DNA of 64,000 nt, from positions 1 to 64,000 of the IMG/VR virus record IMGVR_UViG_3300024520_000047; one strand, 5' to 3'. The notes below the pieces were generated by a model. The model was not told where the DNA came from, ran no database searches, and saw only the letters and a program-made list of their open reading frames with translations. Made by a program: the position numbers and the translations under genes. Shown one piece after another: positions 5,366-27,368 of the stretch. Within the stretch, counting starts at the first letter, position 1. Each line of letters opens with the position of its first letter.

Positions 5366-8300
5366 CTACTCTTCGTCCCATTCAATTTCGTCGGATTCTC
5401 TAGGCCAACTATAAGGAATATCGGTTCCCGGTCTAATATCCTGACTCCCATAAGAATCTTGTTGTCTTTTCCATGGATGTCCGGGGTCTCTATTAATAAC
5501 GGCATTCTCTAAACCAAATAATTTAGCTAATTCCTTCATTTCATCTTTTAGGGTATTAAATCTTTCTCTCCATGAAGTTTCATAAACCTTCCCATCTGGA
5601 TTAATATAATCCGAGTCTCTTCTATTATAGTCTTCAACTGCTTCAGGATGTAACTCTGCGAAGTCTTCCTCATACCTATAAAAGTCGGGCCATTTTGCAT
5701 GGTATCCTATATCTCTCATAGGTATTTCTTCCATGGAGTAAGGGTCATCCAACTTCCCCACTATATCATTCCCCCAATCATCATACTCCTCTTTTTTCTT
5801 ATAAAACTTTAAGATGTCCTTCCAAATATTATCCGCCGTTACACTATCGTCGAGTACTGGAACATAAACATCAATGCGTGCTTCGCCTGGCATATTCCCC
5901 GGCACCGTACTTAGATAATAATCAAACCCCAAAAAATTAAATGGAGAATTCTTCACCAAATAATTGTTCAATGCGGTCACTGGTTCCTGTGGTGTCGGGT
6001 CCACATTCATAGCATAATGTTGTTTACCTCTTCTAATGGACCATGGTGGTTCACCTTTGGGGTGGTCTAGTTCTTGCTTTTTGTTGTCTCTATTAAAGGG
6101 AAAATCCTGTTCATTCAATTCTTCTCTTCTAAAGGTGGGATTATAAATCCATGTATCAGTGGGGTATATTCTTTTCTCTCTTCCCATCCATTTGTTTACT
6201 GCTGTCCCAAACCTCTTATCTTCGTCGGTGAGGCCTATAGGTTCTATTTCATAATATTTTAAATCAGCATCAGGACCTTCCCAGTTTTCGGGTTGTCGAA
6301 ATTTAATAGCCGTAACCACATAAGGTTCATATAAGTCAGGTTTTCTTCCCCCTGTCGTATATTTTCTTCTCCACCCTATACTCTCTATTACCATTATCTC
6401 ATCTCCTATCATTAATTGTGGGTTTACTTTATCTTGAGATTGTTCATTTAATTCTTCTCCTCTAGAGTCTGGTCTTAACATCCATGTGTCGTTAGGATAA
6501 AGATGTGTCAATCTCCTCCATCCTCCACCCGCCCTTAAATCGGCTTGCATTTCTTCAGGGGTCAATTCTTTACGTTCTATTTCATAATGTACGTATTTGT
6601 CGTTAAAGGTATTGTTTTTTATTGATTCTTTGATTTTCACTACTACATAAGGGACATATATTTCTGGTGGGTTGAAACTTGCTCCTTCAGGTTGGTTGTG
6701 TTGAAGTACGAGTATCTCATCTCCTATCATTAATTGGGGATTAAGTTTATCTTTAGTATGTTCTTGTAATACTTCGGGGTCTTCTACTTTTACCCATTTA
6801 TCAAAATAGGGTGCAATCACTTTATAACCTACCCTTCTCCCTTCTGTGTATCTCAATAACTCGTCCTCATCTTTCTTATCCATTAACAACCATAATAGTT
6901 GGGTACCTTCATCTATGTCGAGACCAGACCCTTCATATCCTCTAGTCCAGCCATATCTGGGACTACCTCCACCTCTTCCCTCTGTACTCCACTTCATTTC
7001 CTCATTCTCATCTATTACAGTATAAGTGTGATATAACTTGGGGAATCTTTCAGAAGTAATAATCTGCATACCATTCATAAACTCCCGTCTTTGGTCACTA
7101 TCTTCATCTACATCTATAACCTTAATTTTATCACCCGGTTTTAAAGGAGGATTAACTTCTACTTTCTTACTATCTTGTTCTTGTAAAGATGGTGGTGTGG
7201 GGGACATAATGTACCTCACTTCATTAGGATACAACCAACGAAAATCGTACCCACCTTTTTTGTGTGACTTCTTCCACTTGTTAATTTCAGATAACGGTAA
7301 AAGAAGATATCTCTTCCCTCGTTCCTCCACTCTTTTTCCGTATGCCCGTTCCCTCCCGTGTTCCTCCGTTTCTGGCGTTTTTTGTATAATCCTATAAGGG
7401 ACGAATAAGTCTGGTTGTGTAGTATGGGTTTCTATGTCATCTCGATGGTACCAACCCCTTCCTTCGTGCCACTTAAACCCCATTAACTCTGCAGTCTCTT
7501 CATAATTATGCCAATCTCCTTGCAAGGTATCTTTGACTTCCTGATTCTCCATAAATTCCTTTATTTCGTCGTCCGTCATATATTCAACATCTGGGTCTTC
7601 ATATGCCACTACCGTTATCGTATCTCCCACATTTATGTAGGGATTAACTTTTTCTTGATGTTCTTGTAAAGATTTTGGGGTGGGGGGAGAAATGATGTAT
7701 TTTTCTTCCGAAGGGTACAGCCAACGATAATCTAATCCCTTCACTCGTCCAGAGGCCCATATCTCCCTCTTTTCGTCCTCATGTTCTTCCACTTCAGGTA
7801 GTGTTAAAAGAAGATATCTCATCACATCTCCTTCTTTCCATCCTATTTCTACTTTTTGTACAATCCTATAGGGTACGAATAAGTCTGGATTCTGGTCATT
7901 TAACTCCTTTTTATGATACCATCCCTTACCTGGCCATCGTGTATAGCCCATTAACTCTGCAGTCTCTTCAAAATTATGCCAATCTCCTTCCAATGTATCT
8001 TGGAGGTCCTGATTCTCCATAAATTCCTTTATTTCGTCGTCTGTCATATATTCAACATCTGGGTCTTCATGTGCAATTACAGTTACAGTGTCCCCTACAT
8101 CAATTGGGGGATTAACTTTTTCTTCCTGTTCTTGTAATATTTCTTCTTCCTTATTTACTATTATCCATTGGTAAGGGCCTGATGCCTTTAATTCTTCCTT
8201 TCCGTCCTTTTCCCACTCTTGCCTTCTCCCCCTCTTTCTTTCTTCTCTACTTATTCCATATCCCCATATATCTCCTTTTATTTCTCCTTTCCATGGGTCT

Positions 8301-11300
8301 CCTTGTATTCTCTTTCTTCCTGTTGGTGCCTCATTATTATATACTATATCCTCCACTACATAATTTACAAATAACTCTAACAATTCACCATCATTCAACA
8401 CATATCCATCATCATCCACTATCTGTTCATTCCTATTAGTCCAATAGGGTAGGACTTCACCAGATGCAGCGTTGTCTATAAGTTTTATTACATCCCCTAC
8501 CTTTAATGTAGGTCTACTTATCGGTTGGGATTCTTCATTTAAAATTTCTTCTTCCTCTCTTTTAAAACCAGGACGGAATATCCATTCATCTCCTACTTCA
8601 TAAATAATCTTAGTAGTCATTGTCCATAACCCCTTCCTTTTCCCTTTCTCATCCCAATTCTCCACTTCCCACCTTTCTTTCTCATCGTCCCAATAGGGAA
8701 ATCTACCACTCATAGGTTCAATGTGATAACTAAGTTTCCCTTTAGTGCGAGGTTCCCTAACTCTTTTTATTACCTTATAAGGTATAAAAGTCTCTGGTTC
8801 ATTCTCATGGGTACCATCTACATGTAAAACAATAATCTCATCTCCTTCTTCTAAGTCTGGACTAGGATTTTTTTGTCTTTCTTCCTGTAGGTGAGCAATG
8901 GATGGCTCGTACTTACCTATTTTTAACCACTTATGTCCATTTACTATCATATCCTGATGTAAATTGGCATCGTTAAAGTCTACAAGTAAATCGAGCCTCA
9001 TTACTACATACCCATATACTTGTCTCTTATCCCAGCCTTTATCCCCCTCACCTGTCACTATCCATCCTTCAGCACTTCCATCGTGCCATAATGGGGTTAA
9101 CACCACATACTCATCCCATAAGTTAAGATAACTATCCTTGTCTGTCTTCTCTATTATTTTAATCATATCTCCCGGTTCCAATGGGGGACTAATCTCTCGT
9201 TCCTCTTGTTCTTGTAATACATCACCCCTCAATTTACGTTTGGCGTTGTCTTTGTACTTCGCTCTTTCTTCATCAGATAATTCTACCTTTAACCATTGGT
9301 GGTCACGGTCACGACTTAAGACTTTTAAGTGACGATGGAGGTGACCTGGTAATCCTGGTGTGTCTTGGAACTTTTCCAAATACCCACTCTGTTGTAATTT
9401 ATACAGGTCCTCTATGGTAATAACAATATAATCTCCTTCTTTTTTTGGGGTCCCATATGAAGGATGCCATACCCAATACAATGCAAATGGTGTGGGCGTA
9501 CCGAAAGGCGTTTGTTCTTTTCTTTCTGGTATATCTATAGGTCGTATGATGTCTCCAGATTTTAAAACAGGACTCACTTCTTCTTCCCTTTGTTCCCGTA
9601 ATGTTTTCTTAATATCTTTATTTGTATCAGTTTTTACAATTTCTTTGAACTTATCCAAATAAACTATTCTATCCGAATCTACATTTATTAATTGAGTATT
9701 TGGGGTTAGGTATTTATCTTTAACTTTAATATAGTATACACCATCATCCTTTATACCCAAATCACTTATGAAACCATCAATATAATTTTCATCGTCTATG
9801 CTCTGAGACAATAACCCCTTTAACCCATTCTTAGTTAATTCAGTTGATGGGTCACCTTTGTTTTCATCAGGTTTTTCTTTTGTTGCCTCATACTTCTCTA
9901 AGTATTGGTCTAGTGCTTTAGTGGGCTCTCTCCAATCGGGGTCTTCTTTACCTACTTCATTTCTACCCACTATATTATTGATGAGCATATAGATGGGTGC
10001 ATGTAAAAGTATATTATGCTTAATATTTGGAACGTACTTCAAAATATCATTAGTGACATCATCAAAAATTACCTTATTCCACTTTCCAGTCTTAAACTCT
10101 TGTGCCATATACCAAGCAGCAGCGTTTGCATTAGGACCACCAACATACTCATTTTCTTTTGGGTTTGGTGGTACATCTTCGCCAGCTTTCCTATAGAGTC
10201 CAGATGTTATTCCAAAATCATGACCCTTTGCCCAATCCCTAATACTTGGTGGGTCAAACGCTAATCTTCTTTCTTCATTTTCAGGAGTGTAACCATTGAA
10301 ATCATCTGATGCAATAATAACCCATTGATTAGGGTCTGTAGCTTTATGAAAAGGTACCGCTTTTAATTCCTTACTTACCCATGATTTACCAGCAGATGAT
10401 GTTCCATCTATTAATATAGTAGATTTATCACTTAATCCTTGTTCTCTTTGTTCCCGTAATGTTTTCTTAATATCTACCCCATGCTTAGGTCCCAATGGTG
10501 GGTCCAATAAAAACTTCTGGTTAAGATAATCTCTTAACAAATTTTCCACAAACCAATCTGGAACTGGTTCATCATCTGGTTGGGCTGCAGCAACATCTGC
10601 AACATATCGTGCAAATTTAAGTTTGTATTTATCCCTAATCATTTCCAGTAATCCATCCGAGACAAAGAAAATTTTACTCAAGGGGTCATCACCCAATGCA
10701 ACATCAGGAATGTAATCCCCTTCAGCAATGTCCATGGCTTTGAGTACTACCTTCCCCCACCATCGTTTATATCCTTTGGTATCTTTAAGTGCTGGAGTAA
10801 CAATTTTATTTAATGCTCGGGTAGCGGTAATCCCCACCGCCGCAAATAAAACCTGAGGTAAAAAGAAAGGAATAATTCTCCATAATGATTTAAAAACCCC
10901 TCTACCGATATCGCTTGCTATTCTTTTATTGGTAGCTGCTTCCACCAATGCTTTAAGTTGACCAAAGGTAATAGGTCCTTGTGCTTTACAAAATCCTTTT
11001 ACATTACAAATATTTTCGGTTACGTCTCTTGATGGTGCAACAAAGCCTGATTCTGGGTCTGTCTCACTTCCTTCATATTCGTACTCATCTTCATAATCAG
11101 TTTCTTCATCGTCATCGGGAATCTCAATTTTTGCTACGTCTTCTTCCCATTCTTCTTCAGTATCATATGGTTGTAACTCTATTGGTTCTAATAGGCCTTG
11201 ACCAAACATATCGGCTGCTTCATGGATGTACTCCTTGGGTGGGAAGTGGTCTGGTCTAGTAGCGCCCTTTACGGTTACATAATTAACCCCTATACCTGTT

Positions 11301-14300: not shown

Positions 14301-14485
14301 TCTCTAGTAGGGAGGAGAGGTACCATTCCCTTCATGTGTTCCTTAAGGGTTGTTTTTGTTGGAGAATAGGTACGGTGGGGAAATAAGGGACCTATACTGT
14401 CTTCATATAAATGTAACTTTTTTCTTAAGTCAGTACCCATAAGACCTTGGTCTAATGCATCTTTTATTTCACTTAGTGTCGGCAT
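5366..14485 (-). CDS. giant acidic modular polyprotein P1 (3039 aa): 2 B-repeats, P-loop (CPT-like) kinase module, 9 A-repeats, other modules; LxE linkers
   Basis: Uninterrupted ORF; repeats and linkers visible in translation; IDGTSSAGKS Walker A at ~10380-10420. Confidence 0.9.
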   Translation of the reverse strand: MPTLSEIKDALDQGLMGTDLRKKLHLYEDSIGPLFPHRTYSPTKTTLKEHMKGMVPLLPTREPNSQSFRNSPEHNPEPNNRALEVPVETFIHYLDRHEKSEVEKFVKNHLEELESFYKGIAEEIAAGRIEDPDDYEEIYAHGSPYDGFDHELTQFDHRLTKLGLIDYRKEWNRDAVLLPVPYVLNEWLENIAQQYRPDAFVGFGGYVEIPEPQEPNLTDPTAFSLRKESTSLQEQVHEDDQWEEEDEGISYSPFTKKEIAILNFLAKNFTKEDLIQITTSTDLYPYSGNIGKRWKDAMKLFGHTMPEGWGEMEPKAEASKYAKWALDNWDEEIRGEDGEMDYSKVTKPIKVLPKWYNVNYEETVSQVEFKSGDVDLIAFDEDDALNKGNREFFDWGGNTDVDDYGDSERFEHETTSAEYKGLAEEIKKLIKEQPLTEQDRNKDSWTDEEAEGMDRSAFTPVESKILNTLKSTFTRNELSHISTNTFAYGGNQLAKRWVDLMKLFGIKTSPGTRGMEQRVDASKYAKWASDNWDFAEDLGDYSKIKAPFKELPKWYNVDYEETVDQTEYRRGSVEIMAFDEDDAYERGRDEFYDWNGEVDTYDYGEHEIIDSEISDVTYQGLAESTSSRRTDEEITQFLNDNYKDKFLKLYNLYTLGKEHGEKLVGGVSDASIKQFLKEVQFILYSNRRIPQWTGQSNVWDYTGDGYIPWDRSPFGRMSLHSTVIKWVQNLLLEDILSKEEHIKNAYEWLDTQFPTVVPNEYYPFGEGQFTDAIRSITHIAGLTWHEAQIVVDNFWREKRNAGKITASGKNDRLDEDKKRTLTKGLLEEEEHKKMLFNEDSDFPNINPAKSPNQLKKIYAHFKESLFNYWDNKGPHNDPHILKLLGLDTRKERGLYKIIDEWLVEWHGGREKAIEVAQEKLKGIQEVWDGGYDFKYVVTSIDEKELPWNVDQKKVRKERGWSVEDEIGVFVIVDGGGMANLALGGHDTYTLWDIFHDHQWWSDGDYEEECRTCGLRRSVRDESEDDLTRANRVSDEPDEALKEEVRQEIVEVLEENITDLLNATGIGVNYVTVKGATRPDHFPPKEYIHEAADMFGQGLLEPIELQPYDTEEEWEEDVAKIEIPDDDEETDYEDEYEYEGSETDPESGFVAPSRDVTENICNVKGFCKAQGPITFGQLKALVEAATNKRIASDIGRGVFKSLWRIIPFFLPQVLFAAVGITATRALNKIVTPALKDTKGYKRWWGKVVLKAMDIAEGDYIPDVALGDDPLSKIFFVSDGLLEMIRDKYKLKFARYVADVAAAQPDDEPVPDWFVENLLRDYLNQKFLLDPPLGPKHGVDIKKTLREQREQGLSDKSTILIDGTSSAGKSWVSKELKAVPFHKATDPNQWVIIASDDFNGYTPENEERRLAFDPPSIRDWAKGHDFGITSGLYRKAGEDVPPNPKENEYVGGPNANAAAWYMAQEFKTGKWNKVIFDDVTNDILKYVPNIKHNILLHAPIYMLINNIVGRNEVGKEDPDWREPTKALDQYLEKYEATKEKPDENKGDPSTELTKNGLKGLLSQSIDDENYIDGFISDLGIKDDGVYYIKVKDKYLTPNTQLINVDSDRIVYLDKFKEIVKTDTNKDIKKTLREQREEEVSPVLKSGDIIRPIDIPERKEQTPFGTPTPFALYWVWHPSYGTPKKEGDYIVITIEDLYKLQQSGYLEKFQDTPGLPGHLHRHLKVLSRDRDHQWLKVELSDEERAKYKDNAKRKLRGDVLQEQEEREISPPLEPGDMIKIIEKTDKDSYLNLWDEYVVLTPLWHDGSAEGWIVTGEGDKGWDKRQVYGYVVMRLDLLVDFNDANLHQDMIVNGHKWLKIGKYEPSIAHLQEERQKNPSPDLEEGDEIIVLHVDGTHENEPETFIPYKVIKRVREPRTKGKLSYHIEPMSGRFPYWDDEKERWEVENWDEKGKRKGLWTMTTKIIYEVGDEWIFRPGFKREEEEILNEESQPISRPTLKVGDVIKLIDNAASGEVLPYWTNRNEQIVDDDGYVLNDGELLELFVNYVVEDIVYNNEAPTGRKRIQGDPWKGEIKGDIWGYGISREERKRGRRQEWEKDGKEELKASGPYQWIIVNKEEEILQEQEEKVNPPIDVGDTVTVIAHEDPDVEYMTDDEIKEFMENQDLQDTLEGDWHNFEETAELMGYTRWPGKGWYHKKELNDQNPDLFVPYRIVQKVEIGWKEGDVMRYLLLTLPEVEEHEDEKREIWASGRVKGLDYRWLYPSEEKYIISPPTPKSLQEHQEKVNPYINVGDTITVVAYEDPDVEYMTDDEIKEFMENQEVKDTLQGDWHNYEETAELMGFKWHEGRGWYHRDDIETHTTQPDLFVPYRIIQKTPETEEHGRERAYGKRVEERGKRYLLLPLSEINKWKKSHKKGGYDFRWLYPNEVRYIMSPTPPSLQEQDSKKVEVNPPLKPGDKIKVIDVDEDSDQRREFMNGMQIITSERFPKLYHTYTVIDENEEMKWSTEGRGGGSPRYGWTRGYEGSGLDIDEGTQLLWLLMDKKDEDELLRYTEGRRVGYKVIAPYFDKWVKVEDPEVLQEHTKDKLNPQLMIGDEILVLQHNQPEGASFNPPEIYVPYVVVKIKESIKNNTFNDKYVHYEIERKELTPEEMQADLRAGGGWRRLTHLYPNDTWMLRPDSRGEELNEQSQDKVNPQLMIGDEIMVIESIGWRRKYTTGGRKPDLYEPYVVTAIKFRQPENWEGPDADLKYYEIEPIGLTDEDKRFGTAVNKWMGREKRIYPTDTWIYNPTFRREELNEQDFPFNRDNKKQELDHPKGEPPWSIRRGKQHYAMNVDPTPQEPVTALNNYLVKNSPFNFLGFDYYLSTVPGNMPGEARIDVYVPVLDDSVTADNIWKDILKFYKKKEEYDDWGNDIVGKLDDPYSMEEIPMRDIGYHAKWPDFYRYEEDFAELHPEAVEDYNRRDSDYINPDGKVYETSWRERFNTLKDEMKELAKLFGLENAVINRDPGHPWKRQQDSYGSQDIRPGTDIPYSWPRESDEIEWDEE
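6395..6736. repeat. 24-bp direct repeat at starts of A-repeats 8 and 9 (encodes QLMIGDEI)
   Basis: tatctcatctcctatcattaattg at 6395-6418 and 6713-6736. Confidence 0.85.
7380..8140. repeat. recent tandem duplication of A-repeats 5 and 6
   Basis: ~7480-7620 and ~7950-8090 near-identical; both encode EDPDVEYMTDDEIKEFMENQ...DTL.GDWHN.EETAELMG. Confidence 0.9.
9588..10475. repeat. perfect 30-bp direct repeat flanking the P-loop kinase module
   Basis: ctttgttcccgtaatgttttcttaatatct at 9588-9617 and 10446-10475; both lie in DIKKTLREQRE linkers. Confidence 0.95.
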
Positions 14486-15807
14486 TAAGAAGTATATTTA
14501 TCTAATGCCTCTTGTGCTTGACGGCCTCTTTTATTTTGGTTTACTCTACTTTGATTACTGGGTCTTTCAAAATTTACCATAAAAGAAGCGCCCGCATCTG
14601 ATGCATTGGTCGTTGTTAATAAAGCATTATATGCTTTTTTCTCTTTTCCTTGGAGTTCACTCCATAAATATTCTAATTGTGCGTCGGGGTCGGTAATAGG
14701 TTTTTGTTGTTTTTTCGCAAAGTCATTTAATCTATATAGTCTAGTGTCATGCCATTGTGCGAGCCCCATAGACGTTCCTCTGTCTCCAATAGTACCCGTC
14801 TTAAAATTAGACTCAGATTTCATATTACCCGCAATTCCCGCCGCTTGTTCGGGGGTCAAACCTTTATTAATAAAAAATTTAATGACGTGATTAGAATCTA
14901 TTTGTTGATTACCGGGGTATTTTTTCCCTTTCAAAGGTAATATAAAATTAGCGTCAGGTTCTATTACACCTTTTCTTTCTAATTTTTGTACTGTAGTGGG
15001 GTCATTTATCTCGGGATTGAGATTAATTTTCTTGGGGTCTTTCATCGCTCCCAACACATCAGGGGTTATCATATCAGTAATCTTAAAACCATAATCTTTC
15101 TGAAATGCATTCACCGCTGCTAAAGTTTCGGGACCAAATTTCCCATCTATGCCAAACTTAGGTAATATATAATTTCTCGCAATTAAATCTATTTGCATTT
15201 CTTTTACCTTATCCCTAACATTCCTTCTTCCCCTTCTCATTCCATCTGATAAAGTAAGATTACCTTGTGGTATATTTTGAATTTCTATTTTTTCTTTTGG
15301 TTTTCTTCCTATTCTTTTAATAGTTACACCATCTAAGTAAGGTACAGGGTCAGTAGTAGAACTCCCTTTAGCTTTATCATACACTTCATAATGTAGATGT
15401 GCTCCAGTAGATGAACCGGGACAGTAGTCTCTTTTTCCTCCTCCAGATAATCCAATAACTTGTCCTTTACTTACCGATTCACCTTTGTTAACCCGGATAT
15501 CTTTAATGTGACAATAACGTGTTTTCAATCCTGCACCATGGTCAATGTATATATTACCACCACACGCCCCCTTGGTACATTGAGCTTTAATAATCACACC
15601 ATCTGCTGGGGATAATACTTCGGTTCCACTTTTTGCGTTAATATCTACCCCATGGTGTTGTCTCGTTTTTTTAGTAATGGGATGCACTCTTATACCATAG
15701 GGACTGCTAATTTTAAGACGGCCAGCCAATGGTGGCCCTAAACTAACTTCTACCTCTTCATTTAATAGAATTCTATTTAATTGTTTTTCAGTTATTAATA
15801 TTTTCAT
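14485..15807 (-). CDS. M23 peptidase + peptidoglycan-binding domain + phage-tail-type lysozyme
   Basis: HHGVD (HxxxD) and HLH of M23; DGKFGPETLAAVNAFQ PG-binding; AAGIAGNMKSES...GLAQW tail-lysozyme motif; leader MKILITE...ILLNEE. Confidence 0.9.
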   Translation of the reverse strand: MKILITEKQLNRILLNEEVEVSLGPPLAGRLKISSPYGIRVHPITKKTRQHHGVDINAKSGTEVLSPADGVIIKAQCTKGACGGNIYIDHGAGLKTRYCHIKDIRVNKGESVSKGQVIGLSGGGKRDYCPGSSTGAHLHYEVYDKAKGSSTTDPVPYLDGVTIKRIGRKPKEKIEIQNIPQGNLTLSDGMRRGRRNVRDKVKEMQIDLIARNYILPKFGIDGKFGPETLAAVNAFQKDYGFKITDMITPDVLGAMKDPKKINLNPEINDPTTVQKLERKGVIEPDANFILPLKGKKYPGNQQIDSNHVIKFFINKGLTPEQAAGIAGNMKSESNFKTGTIGDRGTSMGLAQWHDTRLYRLNDFAKKQQKPITDPDAQLEYLWSELQGKEKKAYNALLTTTNASDAGASFMVNFERPSNQSRVNQNKRGRQAQEALDKYTS

Positions 15808-17125: not shown

Positions 17126-17129
17126 TATA

Positions 17130-18876: not shown

Positions 18877-18901
18877 TCTTCTTTTTTAGAATTAATTTAA
18901 A

Positions 18902-18985
18902 TCTAGAGCCCCTACCTGACACAATATCAGGTAGGTTATCTAGTCAGGCCGAATAAGAATTCAGCTCCACCACCCTTTCGGGTTA
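18902..18985 (-). ncRNA. candidate structured RNA directly 3' of tRNA-Gly
   Basis: Hairpins ACCC-GAAA-GGGT, CTGAAT-TCTT-ATTCGG and a 9-bp CCTACCTGA/TCAGGTAGG; possible closing GGAGCT/GGCTCT. Confidence 0.4.
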
Positions 18986-19430: not shown

Positions 19431-20000
19431 ATGAATCCCAACCGTATAAAATCTATCCGCCGCACCTATATTATATTTTCTATAATAGTAGGAATTGTTG
19501 CTCCTATTTTATGCTATTGGTTAATTCCTCATTTTGACATAAAACACGACCCTTTATCTAAATTTGGTATCTCCGAACCCACTTCCCATATCTGGTTAGT
19601 CTCATTAATGTTTATTGCCATTGGATTATGGTTAAATGGGGAATATCGGATTGGGGAAATGATTAAGAAAAAAAAATGGCGTCCTTTATTGAAGTGGTTA
19701 CTGAGAATTTCTACTTTTTCATTATTATTAATGGCAGTAATAGATATGAGTTGGCACTGGACACATAAAACTTTAGCTTTACTTTTTTTCTGTGGATATA
19801 ATGTTTTTGTGTTTGCCTTTGGTATTGTGCGTTCTTTAACTTATGTTAGAAGAGGAATGTTTTCAGTAATAATGGCTACGCTTATGTTATCCACATCTTT
19901 ATTAATTCTTCCATTTCCAAGTTATGGTGTTGCTGAAATATCATATATATTTCTGATAGTGCTGTGGAACACTAAAGTCTTATTTAGGAAAAAATTATAA
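19431..20000 (+). CDS. polytopic membrane protein (DUF998-like)
   Basis: ~6 hydrophobic helices; PLSKFG and H..LALLFF motifs resemble DUF998. Confidence 0.6.
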   Translation: MNPNRIKSIRRTYIIFSIIVGIVAPILCYWLIPHFDIKHDPLSKFGISEPTSHIWLVSLMFIAIGLWLNGEYRIGEMIKKKKWRPLLKWLLRISTFSLLLMAVIDMSWHWTHKTLALLFFCGYNVFVFAFGIVRSLTYVRRGMFSVIMATLMLSTSLLILPFPSYGVAEISYIFLIVLWNTKVLFRKKL

Positions 20001-23000
20001 GGTTTCTTTCCATAAATTTATTAATCGGTTAGCAGTTGGTATTATGTTGCGTTTGGCTTCTCTAAGAGTTACTTCTTTATTTTTATTTTTAAGAGAATGG
20101 ATGGTGGTATCCCAGATAAGGTTTTTAATTTTATCACCATCTTCACTTAAGAGTCCACTATCCTTTTTTAATACAGTAGAATAGGTATCAATCCAGTCTT
20201 TTCCACCAATTAAAAAGTGGGAATAAAAATTCTCATTTGTCATCTCTTTATTTTTAACTTCACTTAAAAAATCAAAAATTAGTTTTCTTTTTTCAACTAG
20301 TTGGGCTGTGGTTACGTGTTGGGAACGTACTTTAATAAAAGCAGTTAAATCCATTTTATCAAACGACTCAAAGAACCTCCTTTTTATTAAAAAATCCTTT
20401 TGGGCTGCTTGTAAATGTCTGTTAACCTCTTCTGTCATATCTCCACGCAACTTTCCTCCCATTGTAAGGGTGTAGTCCGACTTTTTCTCAAAGTCTCTTA
20501 AATCGAAGATATTAATTGTATCTCCAATTTGAAATGGGATATTACTTAGGTTACCACTCTTTGCAATATCAACTATTTTCCCAGTTGGTGTCATATAAAG
20601 TAAAAAGGTCTGAGAGTTTTTACCCCAACCACCTTTGTATTCAAATCTTCCAATGATTAATAATCGTCTAATATAATTAGGAATGTTAGGTCTTTCTTCT
20701 TCTGGTAATTGTGGAATAATGGCTTCCGTTAACGGAGTGTTCCTGATGATAATCCATTTATCTCTCCCTCCTCCATCATCAGCATAATAATCATAGTCTT
20801 CTACTCCTTGATATAATCCCAAGTGTCCATCGTAAGTATCTATCTCGTATTTAATTCCTCCTCTAAACATATCACCTCTCGGTTCTTCGGATGCATTGCC
20901 TTCATATACATGTACCACGATTCCTACAGTAGTATTGGGTATCGTCAGTGTTGTAGTTCCGGGAGGTGCGGGGTCCATTTCTAAGTCCCAAATAAAAATT
21001 TTATCTCCTACTTTAAGTGGTGGACTTATTTCCTCTTTGGGTATTTTGGTGGTATCGATTTTTTGTTCCTTTAAAGTATTGAAATGATAGGCATCCGTAA
21101 TCTCCCAATCATCCGATTCATAATCTCCATGCTCATAGGTATGCATTTCTCCGCCCCACCCATAAAAATCTTCCCTCGATTTCTCTTCCGCATCCGTTGC
21201 TCCAAACGCGGTGACGTTTGCGCTACCCCTTTTAAATACTTGTTCCCAACCACTTTCTTCTGCCTCTACTTCATATTCGGAGGGGTATTCTTTTCTTGCA
21301 TTTTTAATTTGTCCATAATCTCCATCGTCTGCTTCGTGTCTATTCTCTAGTGCCCAGCGTGCATATTTGCTTATTATTGTCCAGATTTGAGCACTTCCCT
21401 CTCCACTGTTGGGTTCACCAAATAGTTTCATTACATCCTCATATCTAGAAGTAACTTGCCGTTGTATATCAGTTTTAAAAGTTCTGGTGGCAATTGCTTT
21501 TAATTCATCGAACGTAAATTCTCTAACAATAGTATTTAATATTTTAACTTCGAGTGCGGTAAAAGGACCATACTCTACATATAAGTCATCATCCTCTAAT
21601 CCACTCTCGGCATCTTGTTCGTTCAATCTTCTGGATGTAATATTCTTGCCACTAGCATCAATTTCTTTTTGTCGTGCCTCTATCTCTTGGGGTATATTGG
21701 ATACATGTTTTTTCACCATAATCCACTTATCGTTAGTCGTAAGGATTCTATTTCCCCTATCCCATTCAATATTTTCTCCTGTTATTGGTAACATGTTCCA
21801 ATACAAATTACGGAAGGTGGGTTCATTTCCAAAAGTTATTTGTTCTGTATTCACGGGTTCGGGAGAAGTAACATAATAAGTCTCCATGATAGTAGGAAAA
21901 GTATCTTCCCCATGTAATTCACCTCTACTTCGCGTTCTATACATGCCAGAACCTGCAGATTGTTTATATCTGGTATCTTTATCTACATCTACCACTCTAA
22001 TAACGTCTCCAATATTTAAAGATGGATTAAGTTTTTCTTTCTGTTCAGTAATCGGTTTTTTATGAACCTTAATCCATTGGTATATCCAAGGGTATAATAG
22101 TTTTGCGGTACCTCTACCTACCATATAGTCCCCATTTAAATAATCTTGATGTTTGTCTGCTGGAAGAAGTGTATATCTCCAAGGCCACTGTGCTTTGTGC
22201 CCAGCAGACTCTTTTTCTACTACTATGTATGGTGTTAATATCTCAGGTCTTTCCGCTTCTCCTCGCCCTTTCATCCTCTCCCTCTCCCTGTCTATATCTA
22301 TTACTCGTATACTATCACCCACTTCTAACTCTGGACTTAATTGGGTTTCTTTTTGTTCTCTTAAAATATATGGTGTGTCACCACCCCATATTTCTACTTC
22401 CTTGCCTACCCCTTTATCATTTCCTTCCCACTCGCCTGTCAGTGCAACCAATTCCATGTTGTCTATCCTCTCTATTATTTGACGTGCCCAAGCTTTTACA
22501 ACAGGGTTGGGGGTTAATCCTCTTAAACGATTATAAGATATGAAATCTCTTTCATCTGGTGGACCAATATTCGTAGTATCAATTAATCCTAATTTATATA
22601 AATCTTCATTGATGGTACCCCATAAATCATATAATTCCATTTGAGCCGTTTCAATTTTATCCGCCAAAAGGCCTATCTCACCTCTTCCTCCTTCTCCTCC
22701 ACCGAATCCACCGTATTTAAAATTTCTTACTCCACCTTCAGTATATGAGTCCTCATAACTGGTGAGTAAAAGTTTAGCTGCTAGAGCTAATTTCTTATAT
22801 ATTCTGAAAACCTCTTGTGTATAATTCTGGTGTAAAAACTTCTTTAGGGGTAAATTCTCACTCTGTTCTTTTATGGTTTCCCGATGTGTAGTACTTTCTA
22901 TCTCCCACCCATCAGATTCCCAATCTCCATAATCATAGGTCTCCATCTCACCACCCCAGTCGTACCAATCAGCTGTAGCCCTATCAGTCACATCCTGTGA

Positions 23001-26000
23001 ACTAAATCCGGGTATATCAACAGAACCGTGTTTGAATATTTTTTCCCATCCGCTTTCTTCCGCCTCTACTTCAAAGTAAGAGGGATAAATTTTAACTGGA
23101 GTTTTAACCTGTGCATAATCTCTTTTTTCATCGACCTCACCTGCAGCTTCACCCCAGTTATCCACCGCCCATCTTGCATATTTGCTCGCTATTACCCAAT
23201 CCTCCATGGTACGAGCGGGTATCGAAAATAATTTCATTATATCATTATATCTCTCTTCTAAGGCACGGGGTAAATTAGCGGCATCACTCTCCCCAATCAT
23301 CTCTAAGTCCTCTGAGGTAAACTCTTGGGCTAACTTATTCAATAACTTGACTTCCATGTTGGTGAAGGGAGTAAAGTCATAGTATTGGTCGTCATCATAG
23401 AATCCTTTATCTTTACCAAATTCCATTTTTTCTTCGTCTAACTGTAAACCTCCACGGTCTATCTTGCTCAATGCATCTAAATTCCCAAAGGAAGGATGGT
23501 CGGTTATCTTATCTTTTTTACTTTGTCTCATTACATCCCATACTCTAGGCTTCATCTTCATGTGATTACTCACCATATACCCTATCTCTTCTGGGTCACC
23601 ACCTAAACTCTCAATGAATTCACTATACTCATTCACTAACTGGGTGGAAACTTTTTCATGACCATGTGCGGTAGGTTGTCCTGTTTTAGGATTTACACCT
23701 AATGTGGCTAACTTACCTAGGTCATGAAAATATGCTGACAAAATTAAATTTATATTCTCAGGTTGTTCAGCAAACGCTCGGTTGGTTACCGTAATAATAT
23801 GTTTAAGTACATTTCCTTCTGGATGCCATTCAGGATTTTGTTTGGCCTTCCATTGGTCCATTAATATTTGTTGTAATGGTCTGGGTGAAGCATTGTATAA
23901 TTCTTTAAAGTTAGTCACTGATTCCCCTAATAAATCGATGTCATCATCCCACATCCCTTTATTTTTCTCCACCAGAATCCATGTATCGGTGTCGGGCATT
24001 AGATATCTCATGATTGCCTTATTTGAAAGAACACCGGGGCGGTCGGGGTAAGACACATCTTTCATGGGTCTATTAATACCATACCAATATTGGTCCCGCT
24101 TGGGTGTAGTGGTAACCCTATAAGGGACAAACAGTTCAGGAACTTGGTCGGGTATTTCTCCTTCTTTATCTTTAACATCTATTACTATTATCTCATCTCC
24201 ACTTTCTAAGGGTGGGTTTACTTTTTGTTGGTCTATGTTCTCGGTGAGACTTGCTGGGTCTGTAGGTTTTGGTGGGCCGAAATTTCCCTCATCATCTTTT
24301 GCCGATGGTTCTTTACTTTGAGGGACCAATTCATACAAGTCATCATATAAGATGTCATTAAAATATTCTTCACTAATATCTGGGTACCAATAACCATCAA
24401 AGTATTTTCCATCTACCTCTAAGTGGTCTCCCCGTTTACCCTCATTATAGTCATCTCCTCGTCCAAACTCTTCTATCATAATCTCCCCAAAAAGTTGGTC
24501 TGGAGTAAGACGTGCCATGTCTCTCATTACATCTTCCAAAGGTCGACTAGCATAATCTTCATGAAACTGAAAGAAATCTGTATTATCCCAATCGTCATCA
24601 CTTATCCACCTTTTTAAGTCACTTTCTATTATCCACGAATAACTTCCATTATTATTATCTCTTACCCATTTTCCTGTTCCGTCGAACCAGTCCTCTATCT
24701 TATCCCGAATATCGTCAAAGATGGCACGTTTGGTTGCATCTTCCTGTTCTATACTATAGGCGCGGGTAATCTTATTTCTAATTTCATCTATCTCACTCTC
24801 TTTTTCGGCAGCAATATCATCCTCAAAATCATTGTCTACATGACCCTCCAATAGTCTGCCGGCCACTTCTTTATCTTTAATCCCAAGAATTTCCATAATC
24901 ATTTTCCAACTTCCATCATCGAGATTATCTAACATCCCCTCATAAAATTCGTTATGGTCATACCATCCATCCCAATCCCATGCGTCCTCACCACACAGAT
25001 ATTTCCGTATGAGTTCTTCATGATTGTCATCATCAAATAATCGAGCTAAATCATCACAATCCCATAATGATGTTACCGGAATGGGTGCTTGAGTATTCAT
25101 TATGTATCTTTTGAGTAACATGGTGACACCATCTCCTTGGATGCCTTGCATCCCTAACAGTTTAAGGTCTTCCCAACTTACCCCATCTTGGTCCCATTTT
25201 TTATAAAGATATTTAACTGCATTTTCAGGATAATCTTTCATTATCCATTCTTTGTCTTCATCTTCCATTACTGAATCAAAAGGCCATCCTCCATGAAATA
25301 AATCTAATTGTTGTTCTTCTTTAATAACTTCTACCGAAGTAGTATCGTTGAGGGTATCTCTGTCTGGATAAAGAGCATCATTAAGGAGTTCTAAGTGATA
25401 TTCCACCTCCGCATCGTGGTCTGCCCAATTAATAACCATACCCTCTTCATCAAAATCAAAATCACCTTCTAATTGGTACTCGGTGGTATCATAATATTGA
25501 CTCATTAATTCTACTGTCTCCTCATTTGCGTTCACGGTATCAGTTAACTCATCAATGGTATTAAGATATTCCAGTTCTACAGTACTCAAATATTCTGCTT
25601 GTAACTCTTCATAATAATACTGGTCTACATATTTATCTTCCATTTGGTCACAGTCACACTTTCCTTCATCTTTTTCATCCTCCGTACATTCCCTATACTC
25701 ATCTTTTTCATCATCATAAAACTCAGTCCACTGTATACATTCACAGTCCTCCTCACTTAATTCACCATAAAAATGACCCCCACTTTGGAGACACTCTTCT
25801 AATATTTCTTCTGACTCAGCCTCTTCAGCATAAAACTCTACAGTATAGTAATAGATATTCGGTAGAGGTTCCCATAATAAATTCGTTATATTCCAATCAC
25901 TAAAGCCCCCACCTTCTTTAATTATCAACCATAAGGTCGCAGCTATCTGTTTTCCATCACTACTACTAAAAATTCCCCCCACATCTAGATATTTCCGTAA

Positions 26001-27368
26001 AGTATTGTAAAAACTATCGAAGTGGTATAAACTTTCATTTAAACGATGAGCGGTTCTTATTAGAGAAATTATCTTTGGGGTTATCTCTCCCCCATCATTG
26101 TGAAATTCGTATTCTTCCTTTAAATATCTTTTAGGTGTGGTGTCTTTGGAATAAACCCATGTATAATTGCCGGGATACAAACTTTTGGGGTCTACATTTA
26201 ATTCGTAAAGAGTATCTAAAGTTATGTCATCCCAATTTTCAATTTTAATCCTTTCCTTCCCTACATCCTCATATTCTGTGGGGGTAAGAAGAGTATAGTA
26301 GGTGTTACGGTTTTCATCGACACTTACATTAACCACCATATAAGGGGTAAGTAATTCTGGTACGTCTTGCCACTCGATATCATCATCTCTATTATACCAT
26401 CCCATCTGACCTGCGTCCCACCTATATCCAGCATTCGCAGCGAGTTCCTCTAGACCACCACCTACTACATAACCCTGTGTTTCTAATACATCAGTTAGTT
26501 CTTCATCCGACAGGTAATGACTACGAAACCCTTTACGGTCAATAACCACTATCTTATCCCCTACTTCTAGTTTAGGGTTATGTCTCCATAATTGGTGTTG
26601 GTTTCTAATATTTTCTTCCTTTAGGGTTGGTGGTAGGGGGTCATTCGTTCCTAGGTCCAATAAAGCGTAATGACCATTCTTCATTCCCAAATTACTAATT
26701 CCTATATCCAACCATCGTCTTCCAGTTGCTTCAATTTCTTTACGAATATTAACAATGTCGTCATACACTTGTCGGCATTCGGGAGACCCATCTACTGGTG
26801 GGTGAATAAGAGCTTTTCCTGTAGGGTCCGAATAAAAATCTACATAAATAGGATTGTCTTCTCTACAACAACATCTAGTGAACATCTTTTCTTCAGGTGT
26901 GGTTGGGTGGGTTAGGAGTTCTAAAACAATAATATACGCTTGACTACTATCTGATGTATAATAAGGAGTCTTAAAAGGGGCGGTAGCAAATACATTTGCT
27001 ACATATTCATTTTGTTTACCTTTTAAACTTTGTGCTTGACGGTGTTCAGCTTCATCTCCAGTAATTTTAATTACTTTATCATCATCAAGAAGTGCAGCAA
27101 TACCATTTCCACCACTAATAATATCAATAACGTCACCTAAATTATTATCAGTAATGTAATCCTTTAAAACCTTCTTAGGGTCAGCACTAAATTTAACTTT
27201 TCCGTGTTCAGCGTCTATTATATATTCTTCCGTATCCGGTACATCAATAGACTGATAAATGTCTTTACGTAACTCAGGGTCATTTCTAAAAGACTGGTCT
27301 ATCGCAACCTGTAATCCCGGGTCTAATTGTTTGGGTGATTCTTGTAATATATTAGGAGATTGTCTCAT
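19995..27368 (-). CDS. giant acidic modular polyprotein P2 (2457 aa): protein-kinase-like, HD hydrolase, 5 A-repeats, 2 B-repeats, Cys-rich module; LxE linkers
   Basis: Kinase motifs SGGNG/VIK/DIGISN/DLG; HD motifs WHPEG...HDLGK...HGHE; repeats visible in translation. Confidence 0.9.
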   Translation of the reverse strand: MRQSPNILQESPKQLDPGLQVAIDQSFRNDPELRKDIYQSIDVPDTEEYIIDAEHGKVKFSADPKKVLKDYITDNNLGDVIDIISGGNGIAALLDDDKVIKITGDEAEHRQAQSLKGKQNEYVANVFATAPFKTPYYTSDSSQAYIIVLELLTHPTTPEEKMFTRCCCREDNPIYVDFYSDPTGKALIHPPVDGSPECRQVYDDIVNIRKEIEATGRRWLDIGISNLGMKNGHYALLDLGTNDPLPPTLKEENIRNQHQLWRHNPKLEVGDKIVVIDRKGFRSHYLSDEELTDVLETQGYVVGGGLEELAANAGYRWDAGQMGWYNRDDDIEWQDVPELLTPYMVVNVSVDENRNTYYTLLTPTEYEDVGKERIKIENWDDITLDTLYELNVDPKSLYPGNYTWVYSKDTTPKRYLKEEYEFHNDGGEITPKIISLIRTAHRLNESLYHFDSFYNTLRKYLDVGGIFSSSDGKQIAATLWLIIKEGGGFSDWNITNLLWEPLPNIYYYTVEFYAEEAESEEILEECLQSGGHFYGELSEEDCECIQWTEFYDDEKDEYRECTEDEKDEGKCDCDQMEDKYVDQYYYEELQAEYLSTVELEYLNTIDELTDTVNANEETVELMSQYYDTTEYQLEGDFDFDEEGMVINWADHDAEVEYHLELLNDALYPDRDTLNDTTSVEVIKEEQQLDLFHGGWPFDSVMEDEDKEWIMKDYPENAVKYLYKKWDQDGVSWEDLKLLGMQGIQGDGVTMLLKRYIMNTQAPIPVTSLWDCDDLARLFDDDNHEELIRKYLCGEDAWDWDGWYDHNEFYEGMLDNLDDGSWKMIMEILGIKDKEVAGRLLEGHVDNDFEDDIAAEKESEIDEIRNKITRAYSIEQEDATKRAIFDDIRDKIEDWFDGTGKWVRDNNNGSYSWIIESDLKRWISDDDWDNTDFFQFHEDYASRPLEDVMRDMARLTPDQLFGEIMIEEFGRGDDYNEGKRGDHLEVDGKYFDGYWYPDISEEYFNDILYDDLYELVPQSKEPSAKDDEGNFGPPKPTDPASLTENIDQQKVNPPLESGDEIIVIDVKDKEGEIPDQVPELFVPYRVTTTPKRDQYWYGINRPMKDVSYPDRPGVLSNKAIMRYLMPDTDTWILVEKNKGMWDDDIDLLGESVTNFKELYNASPRPLQQILMDQWKAKQNPEWHPEGNVLKHIITVTNRAFAEQPENINLILSAYFHDLGKLATLGVNPKTGQPTAHGHEKVSTQLVNEYSEFIESLGGDPEEIGYMVSNHMKMKPRVWDVMRQSKKDKITDHPSFGNLDALSKIDRGGLQLDEEKMEFGKDKGFYDDDQYYDFTPFTNMEVKLLNKLAQEFTSEDLEMIGESDAANLPRALEERYNDIMKLFSIPARTMEDWVIASKYARWAVDNWGEAAGEVDEKRDYAQVKTPVKIYPSYFEVEAEESGWEKIFKHGSVDIPGFSSQDVTDRATADWYDWGGEMETYDYGDWESDGWEIESTTHRETIKEQSENLPLKKFLHQNYTQEVFRIYKKLALAAKLLLTSYEDSYTEGGVRNFKYGGFGGGEGGRGEIGLLADKIETAQMELYDLWGTINEDLYKLGLIDTTNIGPPDERDFISYNRLRGLTPNPVVKAWARQIIERIDNMELVALTGEWEGNDKGVGKEVEIWGGDTPYILREQKETQLSPELEVGDSIRVIDIDRERERMKGRGEAERPEILTPYIVVEKESAGHKAQWPWRYTLLPADKHQDYLNGDYMVGRGTAKLLYPWIYQWIKVHKKPITEQKEKLNPSLNIGDVIRVVDVDKDTRYKQSAGSGMYRTRSRGELHGEDTFPTIMETYYVTSPEPVNTEQITFGNEPTFRNLYWNMLPITGENIEWDRGNRILTTNDKWIMVKKHVSNIPQEIEARQKEIDASGKNITSRRLNEQDAESGLEDDDLYVEYGPFTALEVKILNTIVREFTFDELKAIATRTFKTDIQRQVTSRYEDVMKLFGEPNSGEGSAQIWTIISKYARWALENRHEADDGDYGQIKNARKEYPSEYEVEAEESGWEQVFKRGSANVTAFGATDAEEKSREDFYGWGGEMHTYEHGDYESDDWEITDAYHFNTLKEQKIDTTKIPKEEISPPLKVGDKIFIWDLEMDPAPPGTTTLTIPNTTVGIVVHVYEGNASEEPRGDMFRGGIKYEIDTYDGHLGLYQGVEDYDYYADDGGGRDKWIIIRNTPLTEAIIPQLPEEERPNIPNYIRRLLIIGRFEYKGGWGKNSQTFLLYMTPTGKIVDIAKSGNLSNIPFQIGDTINIFDLRDFEKKSDYTLTMGGKLRGDMTEEVNRHLQAAQKDFLIKRRFFESFDKMDLTAFIKVRSQHVTTAQLVEKRKLIFDFLSEVKNKEMTNENFYSHFLIGGKDWIDTYSTVLKKDSGLLSEDGDKIKNLIWDTTIHSLKNKNKEVTLREAKRNIIPTANRLINLWKETL

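What the first reader, a model, noticed from the sequence alone, without database searches (positions are those of the whole stretch)
6120..26610. A-repeat: 14 copies of an (N/S)PxLxxGDxIxV...PxLxxPYxV domain with hypervariable inserts
Seen: nine tandem copies in P1 (~9590 to 6120) and five dispersed in P2 (~26610, 24235, 22350, 22035, 21060). The ends are conserved (e.g. VNPPLKPGDKIKVIDVD; PDLFVPYRIV; terminal W) while the central insert varies from ~5 to ~60 aa. The insert of the first P2 copy (YLSDEELTDVLETQG...EELAANAGYRWDAGQMGWY) resembles P1 copies 5/6 (YMTDDEIKEFMENQ...EETAELMGYTRWPGKGWY), suggesting exchange between genes. GDxIxV recalls KOW/SH3-like barrels. Inference: a small scaffold diversified into a library of binders, possibly anti-defence proteins.
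Basis: partly seen in the sequence, partly recalled or inferred. Interest (0 to 1): 0.7.

Follow-up and report, generated by a model that had tools for sequence, protein, structure and literature searches.

The report
Bead-string effector proteins of a marine jumbo phage
Two giant genes of an uncultured marine T4-type jumbo phage string together 14 copies of a new small barrel domain and several enzymes. Every joint carries the short signal that T4-type capsid proteases cut, so the giants are probably diced inside the capsid into many small proteins injected into the host.

Summary
P1 (5366-14485, minus strand, 3039 aa) holds nine tandem A copies and P2 (19995-27368, minus strand, 2457 aa) holds five, at the stated places. 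Profiles built from one protein's copies find the other (E 1e-28 and 1e-34), and no other copy exists in the 246-kb genome.

- **The domain:** about 100 aa. It models as an SH3/KOW/Tudor-like five-strand barrel plus one helix (pLDDT 79). The first loop varies from 8 to 64 aa.
- **Rarity:** no Pfam, PHROG or PDB sequence relative, and only 69 clusters among 1.84 billion proteins.
- **Main new point:** almost every module boundary carries (L/I)-x-E-(H/Q). This holds for A copies and for unrelated modules alike, and it is the T4 gp21 cleavage motif.
- **Supporting context:** the genome encodes a T4-type prohead protease with its catalytic triad, and a gp23 capsid protein. Module content and order differ between relatives. 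A 33-nt linker repeat flanks one inserted module. A cell-wall hydrolase gene is a conserved neighbour.

Best reading (about 0.45): these are capsid-packaged polyproteins cut into injected effector and binder units. Cleavage, packaging and the A domain's targets are all untested.

The parts
5366..14485 (-). P1, giant ORF of 3039 aa. Order: N-terminal region, two B repeats, unknown region, hydrophobic core, P-loop module, nine A copies, C-terminal domain. Acidic (pI 4.8).
19995..27368 (-). P2, giant ORF of 2457 aa. Order: kinase-like domain, A1, unknown region with a Cys-rich acidic stretch, A2, HD, B, unknown, A3, A4, B, A5, basic C-terminal domain. Overall pI 4.5.
9206..9580 (-). P1 A copy 1 (aa 1636-1760)
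8882..9196 (-). P1 A copy 2 (aa 1764-1868)
8531..8869 (-). P1 A copy 3 (aa 1873-1985)
8132..8521 (-). P1 A copy 4 (aa 1989-2118)
7670..8119 (-). P1 A copy 5 (aa 2123-2272), with a 62-aa insert
7178..7651 (-). P1 A copy 6 (aa 2279-2436), a recent tandem duplicate of copy 5 (54% aa identity; 79% nt identity over about 270 nt)
6761..7159 (-). P1 A copy 7 (aa 2443-2575)
6440..6748 (-). P1 A copy 8 (aa 2580-2682), the copy that was modelled
6116..6430 (-). P1 A copy 9 (aa 2686-2790)
26169..26585 (-). P2 A copy 1 (aa 262-400), with a 60-aa insert of the same subtype as P1 copies 5/6
23889..24224 (-). P2 A copy 2 (aa 1049-1160)
22044..22343 (-). P2 A copy 3 (aa 1676-1775)
21669..22034 (-). P2 A copy 4 (aa 1779-1900)
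20724..21032 (-). P2 A copy 5 (aa 2113-2215), the most divergent copy. It is conserved in the P2-like protein of relative G001.
6110..6118 (-). Example of the inter-module linker signal: L-N-E (aa 2790-2792) followed by Q, between A copy 9 and the C-terminal domain. The same (L/I)xE(Q/E/H/N) occurs 22 times in P1 and 14 times in P2, mostly at module boundaries.
10442..10474 (-). 33-nt linker repeat, copy 1 (encodes DIKKTLREQRE), upstream of the P-loop module
9584..9616 (-). 33-nt linker repeat, copy 2 (32 of 33 bases identical), downstream of the P-loop module. Ortholog P0001 has one copy and no module.
9593..10450 (-). P-loop (Walker A, GTSSAGKS) module, aa 1346-1631. Only a weak resemblance to chloramphenicol-phosphotransferase-like kinases.
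26616..27338 (-). P2 N-terminal module resembling phage protein kinases
23436..23843 (-). P2 HD-domain module (Pfam HD 20.8 bits, just under the cut-off of 22; PHROG 6931; tblastn hit to a phage 'tRNA nucleotidyltransferase')
14485..15807 (-). Neighbour gene: M23 peptidase + PG_binding_1 + Phage_lysozyme2 (440 aa). Its stop overlaps the P1 start. The pairing is conserved in relatives.
15818..17125 (-). Neighbour gene: 435-aa protein with a zincin-like HELVHH...EDEAN motif. The same module lies inside the giant proteins of relatives P0002 and G002.

Best explanation
P1 and P2 are cargo polyproteins of a T4-type marine jumbo phage.

**Shown**
- Each is a string of independently folding modules: 14 copies of a new SH3-like barrel, four copies of a second repeat (B), and kinase-like, HD and P-loop enzyme modules.
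- The modules are joined by short linkers that model with low confidence. Nearly all linkers carry (L/I)-x-E followed by H or Q.
- The genome encodes a T4 gp21-type prohead protease with its catalytic His/Ser/Asp, next to scaffold-like and gp23-type capsid genes.
- Module number, order and fusion state differ freely between relatives.
- One module in P1 is flanked by a near-identical 33-nt linker repeat.

**Inferred**
- The giants are incorporated into the prohead core.
- The prohead protease cuts after the Glu of each linker, releasing roughly 20 pieces from P1 and 15 from P2.
- These pieces leave the capsid with the DNA, helped by the neighbouring cell-wall hydrolase.
- They then act in the host cell before any phage gene is expressed.
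- The A barrels would be small acidic binding units that use their variable loops to hold host targets (defence or takeover targets). The linker DNA would also serve as a recombination site for swapping cassettes.
For: - **Repeat family is real.** It is cross-validated between the two proteins.
- **Linker signal at A copies.** (L/I)xE lies just upstream of 147 of 162 A domains across 70-odd family proteins, against 22% of random windows. The Glu is at least 90% conserved in 108 instances, as conserved as core residues.
- **Linker signal at other modules.** The same motif also bounds unrelated modules: P-loop, B, HD, SET and the C-terminal domain.
- **Motif statistics.** (L/I)xE(Q/E/H/N) occurs 22 times in P1 against 9.5 +/- 2.9 expected, and 14 times in P2 against 7.3 +/- 2.6. 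Inside A-domain bodies (L/I)xE is depleted: 105 against 153.8 +/- 10.8.
- **Linker flexibility.** Linkers model as low-confidence coil (pLDDT 51-53) while the barrel core scores 81-94.
- **Protease and capsid genes.** Peptidase_S77 scores 82 bits, and the catalytic H/S/D align with T4 gp21 structure 5JBL. gp23 scores 215 bits. The capsid protein has I-N-E|A just before the conserved N-terminal core.
- **Published specificity.** T4 gp21 cuts after L/I-X-E, and short N-terminal targeting peptides end in that motif (PMC9026906).
- **Co-occurrence.** A second jumbo record (G002) has both the S77 protease and A-domain proteins.
- **Modularity.** P1 has 9 A copies, its ortholog P0001 has 5, and the P1-like protein of G001 has none. 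The kinase-like, zincin and P-loop modules sit in different orders or in separate genes. A 33-nt repeat flanks the P-loop module, which is absent from P0001.
- **Conserved neighbour.** An M23/lysozyme gene sits nearby in relatives.
- **Intracellular-type enzymes.** Kinase-like and HD modules here, and SET and PAP2 in relatives.
Against: - No direct evidence exists of packaging or cleavage. The phage is uncultured and no proteomics was available.
- The specificity of this distant gp21 homologue is unknown. The phiKZ-type homologues use S/A-x-E instead.
- The Glu sits at a fixed distance, 6 residues before (N/S)P in 70 of 113 cases. The motif could therefore be an N-terminal structural extension of the A domain.
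- The depletion of (L/I)xE inside domains is partly mirrored by (L/I)xK (89 against 112). Strand periodicity may contribute.
- N-terminal targeting-like peptides are not statistically distinctive: 21 of 209 ORFs have one.
- P1 and P2 lie about 190 kb from the head genes on this incomplete record.
- T4 internal proteins are basic, whereas these modules are acidic.
- The protease-plus-linker co-fold gave no answer.
- Only one A copy was modelled.
Confidence: 0.45

Rival explanations
1. [quoted passage not shown] They would tether enzyme modules, or help the chain thread through the tail and envelope. The (L/I)xE(H/Q) stretch would be a conserved linker or domain cap.
For: - The architecture fits the polyvalent-protein class: many unrelated domains in one phage polypeptide, peptidase and lysin association, and predicted injection (PMC5512222).
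- A zincin-like HELVHH module is adjacent here and fused inside relatives.
- P1 has a hydrophobic segment in a core conserved in huge phages.
- The linker Glu keeps a fixed register relative to the A domain.
Against: - The motif also bounds non-A modules.
- It matches the T4 protease motif in a genome that has that protease.
- Free permutation of module order fits independent units at least as well.
- The zincin module gives only a weak, sub-threshold Pfam hit (M78, E 0.03).
Confidence: 0.27
2. P1 and P2 are not virion proteins at all. They would be giant host-takeover or anti-defence proteins made inside the infected cell, and the A arrays would be multivalent binding scaffolds.
For: - Neighbours include nucleotide-metabolism and other non-structural genes.
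- The locus is far from the head gene cluster on the record.
- No PHROG structural family matches.
Against: - A virion-type cell-wall hydrolase (M23 + lysozyme, with relatives in tape-measure and minor head proteins) is a conserved neighbour.
- The protease-type motif at every joint would have no explanation.
- A 9-kb gene is a slow way to make early effectors.
Confidence: 0.15
3. The A arrays are external structural repeats, such as a fibre, whisker or capsid decoration, whose variable loops bind host surfaces.
For: - Tandem small beta domains with variable loops are typical of decoration and adhesin proteins.
- Copy number varies between relatives.
Against: - The same chains carry kinase-like, HD, P-loop, SET and PAP2 modules that act on intracellular substrates.
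- No Ig, collagen, beta-helix or known fibre repeat matched.
- The proteins are very acidic and Trp-rich.
- The relative G001 has the P1 core with no A copies.
Confidence: 0.06

Closest known systems
T4 internal proteins (IPI, IPII, IPIII) and Alt: capsid-targeted, gp21-processed, injected with the DNA
   Same: - The genome has the T4-type protease and a capsid protein in the T4 gene order, with a scaffold-like gene between them.
- The cut signal is L/I-x-E.
- The predicted products are small proteins or enzymes delivered with the DNA.
- T4 IPI* is an anti-restriction protein (PMC3012670, PMC9026906).
   Different: - Here dozens of units are concatenated in two ORFs instead of one gene each.
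- The units are acidic, not basic.
- There is no sequence similarity.
- Packaging and cleavage are not shown.
Polyvalent proteins of phages and conjugative elements (Iyer et al. 2017, PMC5512222)
   Same: - Giant polypeptides combine many unrelated effector domains.
- They are associated with peptidase and cell-wall hydrolase modules.
- They are predicted to be injected and processed into functional units.
   Different: - In the passages searched, that paper does not mention SH3, SET or PAP2 domains. The A and B domains have no Pfam family, so they were probably not among the domains it describes.
- Processing there is attributed to an internal zincin-like peptidase. Here the joints carry the prohead-protease motif.
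Inner-body and ejection protein paralogue families of phiKZ, 201phi2-1 and SPN3US
   Same: Families of paralogous head-internal proteins are cut C-terminal to Glu by a gp21-related protease and ejected into the host (PMC5694885, PMC9026906).
   Different: - Those are separate genes with long propeptides.
- Their motif is S/A-x-E.
- They have no sequence relation to the A domain.
SH3-like small beta-barrels (KOW, Tudor, EF-P N-domain, CarD/Mfd RID, DUF4314)
   Same: - The predicted five-strand barrel topology is shared, with Z 5-5.5 and TM 0.45-0.53.
- The variable loops sit where SH3-type domains bind ligands.
   Different: - There is no sequence-level match to any of them.
- The A domain has an extra helix between strands 3 and 4.
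- The fold scores are in the range of generic resemblance.

Membership tests
Substrates of a T4-type (gp21, Peptidase_S77) prohead protease | The genome encodes the protease with its catalytic His/Ser/Asp | tested here: met
   PF03420 scores 82.4 bits at 213609-214082. The alignment to 5JBL shows the ELNHP His, SSRG Ser and FDLV Asp at the catalytic positions.
Substrates of a T4-type (gp21, Peptidase_S77) prohead protease | An L/I-x-E motif lies in an accessible segment | tested here: met
   147 of 162 A-domain upstream windows carry it. The linkers model at pLDDT 51-53. The motif definition comes from PMC9026906.
Substrates of a T4-type (gp21, Peptidase_S77) prohead protease | An N-terminal capsid-targeting peptide of 10-20 aa ends in the motif | tested here: inconclusive
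   P2 starts MRQSPNILQE and the 435-aa neighbour starts MEINLKNIIQE. However, 21 of 209 ORFs show such a pattern, and the early LSE of P1 is not kept in its ortholog.
Substrates of a T4-type (gp21, Peptidase_S77) prohead protease | The protein is present in the head and observed to be cleaved | not testable with these tools
   This needs virion mass spectrometry or an in-vitro protease assay.
Polyvalent proteins (Iyer et al. 2017) | Two to fifteen unrelated domains sit in one phage or plasmid polypeptide, including enzymatic effectors | tested here: met
   P1 and P2 hold A, B, kinase-like, HD and P-loop modules. Relatives hold SET and PAP2 above the Pfam cut-offs.
Polyvalent proteins (Iyer et al. 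2017) | Association with a zincin-like processing peptidase (MPTase) | tested here: inconclusive
   An HELVHH...EDEAN module is adjacent here and fused in relatives. Its only Pfam hit is a weak one to M78 (E 0.03, below the cut-off).
Polyvalent proteins (Iyer et al. 2017) | Genomic context of virion or entry genes | tested here: met
   An M23 + PG-binding + lysozyme or SLT gene is a conserved neighbour.
KOW / SH3-like small barrel | Five-strand barrel fold | tested here: met
   The AlphaFold model has pLDDT 79 and all five models agree. VIA gives Z 5-5.5 to EF-P, Tudor, KOW and SH3. This rests on a prediction for one copy only.
KOW / SH3-like small barrel | Sequence membership of a curated family (KOW, SH3, Tudor, DUF4314) | tested here: not met
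   None of these families appeared among the sub-threshold Pfam matches of the 108 instances (best E 0.0041). No PDB sequence matched at a meaningful level.
Structural fibre or decoration repeats | Match to a known fibre, Ig-like, collagen or beta-helix repeat | tested here: not met
   No such match in Pfam, PHROGs or the fold searches.

The most novel reading that the evidence does not exclude
A tailed dsDNA phage uses a true polyprotein strategy. Two giant ORFs would be diced by the prohead protease inside the capsid into about 35 separate injectable proteins. The conserved linker would serve both as the cut site and, at the DNA level, as the recombination joint. That joint would let barrel-binder and enzyme cassettes be gained, lost and reordered, giving a shuffling library of pre-made injected effectors.
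Probability: 0.35. Interest if true: 0.8.

Novelty: new variant of a known kind. Interest (0 to 1): 0.62.

Why it matters
**If the polyprotein reading holds**
- It would show a new way for large phages to pre-load many small effectors into the capsid from one gene, extending the T4 internal-protein and 'polyvalent protein' concepts.
- It would give a simple sequence rule, (L/I)xE(H/Q) linkers plus an S77 protease, for finding injected cargo in uncultured phages.
- The linker-delimited cassettes would make anti-defence and host-takeover factors of marine phages directly minable and testable one module at a time. The host here is probably a member of the Bacteroidota.

**Independently of that reading**
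- The A domain is an undescribed, compact scaffold that tolerates loop variation. It could interest structural biologists and binder engineers.

Tried and rejected
- **Co-fold of the protease with a 24-aa linker peptide.** It gave no answer, with score 0.00 and the partner unfolded. It counts neither way.
- **T4 late-promoter motif TATAAATA.** It is not enriched in the window (17 found against 16 expected) and is not placed upstream of P1 or P2, so it says nothing about timing.
- **N-terminal targeting peptides as evidence.** I dropped this because 10% of all ORFs show the pattern.
- **DNA search of the phage collection with P1.** No match.
- **Protein search of the phage collection with P2.** Only the HD module matched, so no cultured phage carries the A domain at that sensitivity.
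- **P1 C-terminal domain against the phage collection.** No match.
- **The search for related loci with the 108-row alignment.** It failed for lack of a conserved stretch.
- **Relative G001.** It has no detectable S77 protease or gp23, but it is only 60% complete, so this is uninformative.
- **ESM Atlas look-alikes of the A domain.** The best score was 0.77, below a useful level.
- **Diversity-generating mechanism.** I rejected this. Paralogues differ by indels and old divergence, and the four population samples show few variants in the array.
- **Recent gene-to-gene exchange of the long insert.** I rejected this because there is no nucleotide similarity.
Full report
**Setting**

The window is the first 64 kb of a 245,874-bp IMG/VR virus record, estimated 77% complete. 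Several independent seawater metagenomes hold the studied stretch at 99% identity or more. The genome has a T4-type prohead protease (Peptidase_S77, 82 bits). Beside it lie a scaffold-like gene and a gp23-type major capsid protein (215 bits), in the T4 gene order.

The nearest capsid relatives are uncultured huge phages, Microcystis phage Mel-JY01, Flavobacterium phage immuto and Rhodothermus RM378, at about 37-43% identity. A relative's contig carries CHU_C and DUF1573 genes. I infer a marine Bacteroidota host, but this is not shown.

**The observation**

P1 (5366-14485, minus strand, 3039 aa) and P2 (19995-27368, minus strand, 2457 aa) are intact ORFs.

- A profile of the P1 copies alone finds P2 at E 1.8e-28. 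A profile of the P2 copies alone finds P1 at E 1.8e-34.
- Nothing else in the genome matches.
- P2 copy 5 is the most divergent. It is nevertheless conserved in the P2-like protein of a relative.
- The first loop ranges from 8 to 64 aa, and two later regions also vary.
- P1 copies 5 and 6 are a recent tandem duplicate (54% aa identity; 79% nt identity over about 270 nt).
- P2 copy 1 shares their long insert at 30-33% identity, with no DNA similarity. That makes it an old shared subtype, not a recent exchange.

**The domain**

With 108 family instances as the alignment, all five AlphaFold models agree at pLDDT 74-79. The structure has five strands plus one helix between strands 3 and 4. The core scores 81-94 and both flanking linkers score about 51-53.

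- Fold searches give only generic small-barrel matches. These include EF-P N-domain, Tudor, NusG/Spt5 KOW, CarD, UvrD/PcrA Tudor, SH3, PWWP/chromo and DUF4314, at Z 5-5.5, TM 0.45-0.53 and Foldseek E of 0.005 or worse.
- Pfam gave only scattered sub-threshold matches. PDB sequences gave nothing at E below 0.88. PHROGs matched P1 and P2 only at the HD module.
- A profile search of 1.84 billion representative proteins found 69 clusters, all from metagenomes, with 1-6 copies each. P1's nine copies are the most seen.
- The copies are mostly acidic, with pI 4.3-5.7 and two near 7.

So the fold guess (KOW/SH3-like) is supported at the level of a prediction for one copy. The family itself is undescribed.

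**The linkers**

Every A copy is preceded by (L/I)-x-E-(Q/E/H), except P2 copy 1, where the nearest one (LKE) lies 14 residues further upstream.

- Across the family, 147 of 162 A domains have (L/I)xE in the 18 residues before the domain, against 22% of random windows in the same proteins. The instances are related, so the tiny p-value overstates independence.
- The Glu is at least 90% conserved in 108 instances.
- The residue pattern is L or I at P3, N/S/T/Q at P2, and H or Q after the Glu. The Glu lies 6 residues before (N/S)P in 70 of 113 cases.
- The same motif also bounds unrelated modules. In P1 and P2 these are the P-loop module, both ends of the B repeats, the HD module and the C-terminal domain. 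In relatives they are the SET, core, zincin and P-loop modules.
- (L/I)xE(Q/E/H/N) occurs 22 times in P1 (9.5 +/- 2.9 expected) and 14 times in P2 (7.3 +/- 2.6 expected).
- Inside the A-domain bodies (L/I)xE is depleted, 105 against 153.8 +/- 10.8. The control (L/I)xK is also somewhat low, at 89 against 112.

T4 gp21 cuts after L/I-X-E, and T4 internal proteins carry a 10-aa targeting peptide ending in that motif (PMC9026906). The protease here keeps the catalytic His, Ser and Asp of T4 gp21. The capsid protein has I-N-E|A just ahead of its conserved N-terminal core.

**Modularity**

- P1 and its ortholog P0001 are 76% identical over the first 1352 aa and 53% over the C-terminal part. Yet P1 has nine A copies and P0001 five, only partly corresponding.
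- The P-loop module of P1 (aa 1346-1631) is absent from P0001. In P1 it is flanked by a 33-nt direct repeat with 32 of 33 bases identical, encoding the linker DIKKTLREQRE.
- In record G001 the P1-like protein (938 aa) has a B repeat, PAP2, the hydrophobic core and the C-terminal domain, but no A copy. Its P2-like protein has one A copy. The gene order P2 - zincin - M23 - P1 appears to be kept.
- In record G002, which also has the S77 protease (88.7 bits), A domains sit in four ORFs. There the kinase-like module is C-terminal, and the zincin and P-loop modules are fused to the P1-like protein.
- A cell-wall hydrolase gene (M23 + PG-binding + lysozyme or SLT) is a conserved neighbour.
- Other modules are of intracellular type. 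P2 has a phage-kinase-like N-terminus and an HD domain. Relatives have SET and PAP2.

**Interpretation**

The best-supported reading is that P1 and P2 are capsid-packaged cargo polyproteins. The prohead protease would cut them at each linker into about 35 small units that enter the host with the DNA. The A barrels would be binder-type units with variable loops.

What is shown:
- the repeat family and the predicted barrel;
- the linker motif and its independence of domain type;
- the presence of an apparently intact protease;
- the cassette behaviour and the conserved lysin neighbour.

What is inferred: packaging, cleavage, injection and binding function. I put this reading at about 0.45.

The main rival (0.27) is an intact or zincin-processed polyvalent protein in the sense of Iyer et al. 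2017 (PMC5512222). Lesser rivals are an intracellular non-virion protein (0.15) and an external structural repeat (0.06).

**Comparison and novelty**

Functionally the system resembles three known things: T4 internal proteins and Alt, polyvalent proteins, and the processed inner-body or ejection paralogue families of phiKZ-like phages (PMC5694885). It differs in three ways:
- dozens of units are concatenated in two ORFs;
- a prohead-protease-type signal sits at every joint;
- the domain repertoire is built around a new barrel family.

I found no paper describing this. I rate it a new variant of a known kind.

**Limits**

- Only one A copy was modelled.
- The protease's specificity is assumed from T4.
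- The co-fold test gave no answer.
- All relatives are metagenomic fragments.

Noticed in passing
window 13268-13726, 12671-13114 (P1); 22923-23366, 21123-21563 (P2); a possible degenerate copy in 15818-17125: A second repeat family ('B', about 150 aa) runs from FTxxExxILN to W(G/N)GExxxYDYG(D/E). It occurs twice in each giant protein and recurs in relatives P0001, P0003, G001 and G002. It is always preceded by an acidic stretch and followed about 18 aa later by (L/I)xE(Q/E). No family match was found.
   Followed up: partly
window 10442-10474 and 9584-9616: A 33-nt direct repeat (32 of 33 bases identical) encodes the linker DIKKTLREQRE and brackets the P-loop module. The ortholog P0001 has one copy and no module, which looks like a cassette insertion or deletion joint.
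   Followed up: yes
window 7538-8007: One low-depth contig from a seawater run (X6) joins 7538 to 8007 and skips 468 nt. That is exactly one A5/A6 unit, with 35 nt shared at the joint. It is either a real one-copy variant or an assembly collapse at the repeat.
   Followed up: partly
window 48736-49317 (+), 49333-49860 (+), 54399-55541 (-); genome 184852-185214 (+): Four ORFs share an N-terminus of the form M(K/R)Lxxx(L)(S/H)x(L/I)(I/V/L)(S/L/-)E, for example MKLMDQLSYLIED and MKLLKHLSNIISE. The first has an endolysin-type domain. They are possible capsid-targeting peptides of separate packaged proteins.
   Followed up: partly
window 10451-11098, with the hydrophobic segment at 10823-10882: The conserved core of P1 (ICNVKGFC...WRIIPFFLPQVLF...DPLSKIFF...) has 30-33% identical homologues in the largest known uncultured phages (LR756501/2/3 and LR745206, 634-735 kb). 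In LR756501 it is a stand-alone ORF of about 237 aa. It may be a membrane-active entry module.
   Followed up: partly
window 25572-25796 (P2 aa 525-599): A very acidic Cys-rich stretch (ECLQSGG...DCECIQW...RECTEDE...CDCDQ) is also present in the P2-like protein of G001, and a similar stretch lies in a giant protein of G002. It may bind metal.
   Followed up: no
window 19998-20696 (P2 aa 2224-2457): The C-terminal module of P2 is the only strongly basic piece (pI 9.5) in two otherwise acidic giants. It is conserved in G001.
   Followed up: no
window 1590-2657, 39222-40655, 42778-43854, 43910-45829: Other genes in the window are a thymidylate synthase about 90 aa longer than the Pfam profile, a DUF2828 + DUF7788 protein, a glutamine-synthetase-like protein and a PcfJ-like protein.
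   Followed up: no
L013 (record G002) 13612-18975: The P1-like protein of G002 starts with three further short GD/DD-type barrel-like units (IGDRIQILE, KGDFIMVEN, VDDKVQILHV) that the A profile did not score. The barrel family may be wider than the 69 clusters found.
   Followed up: no
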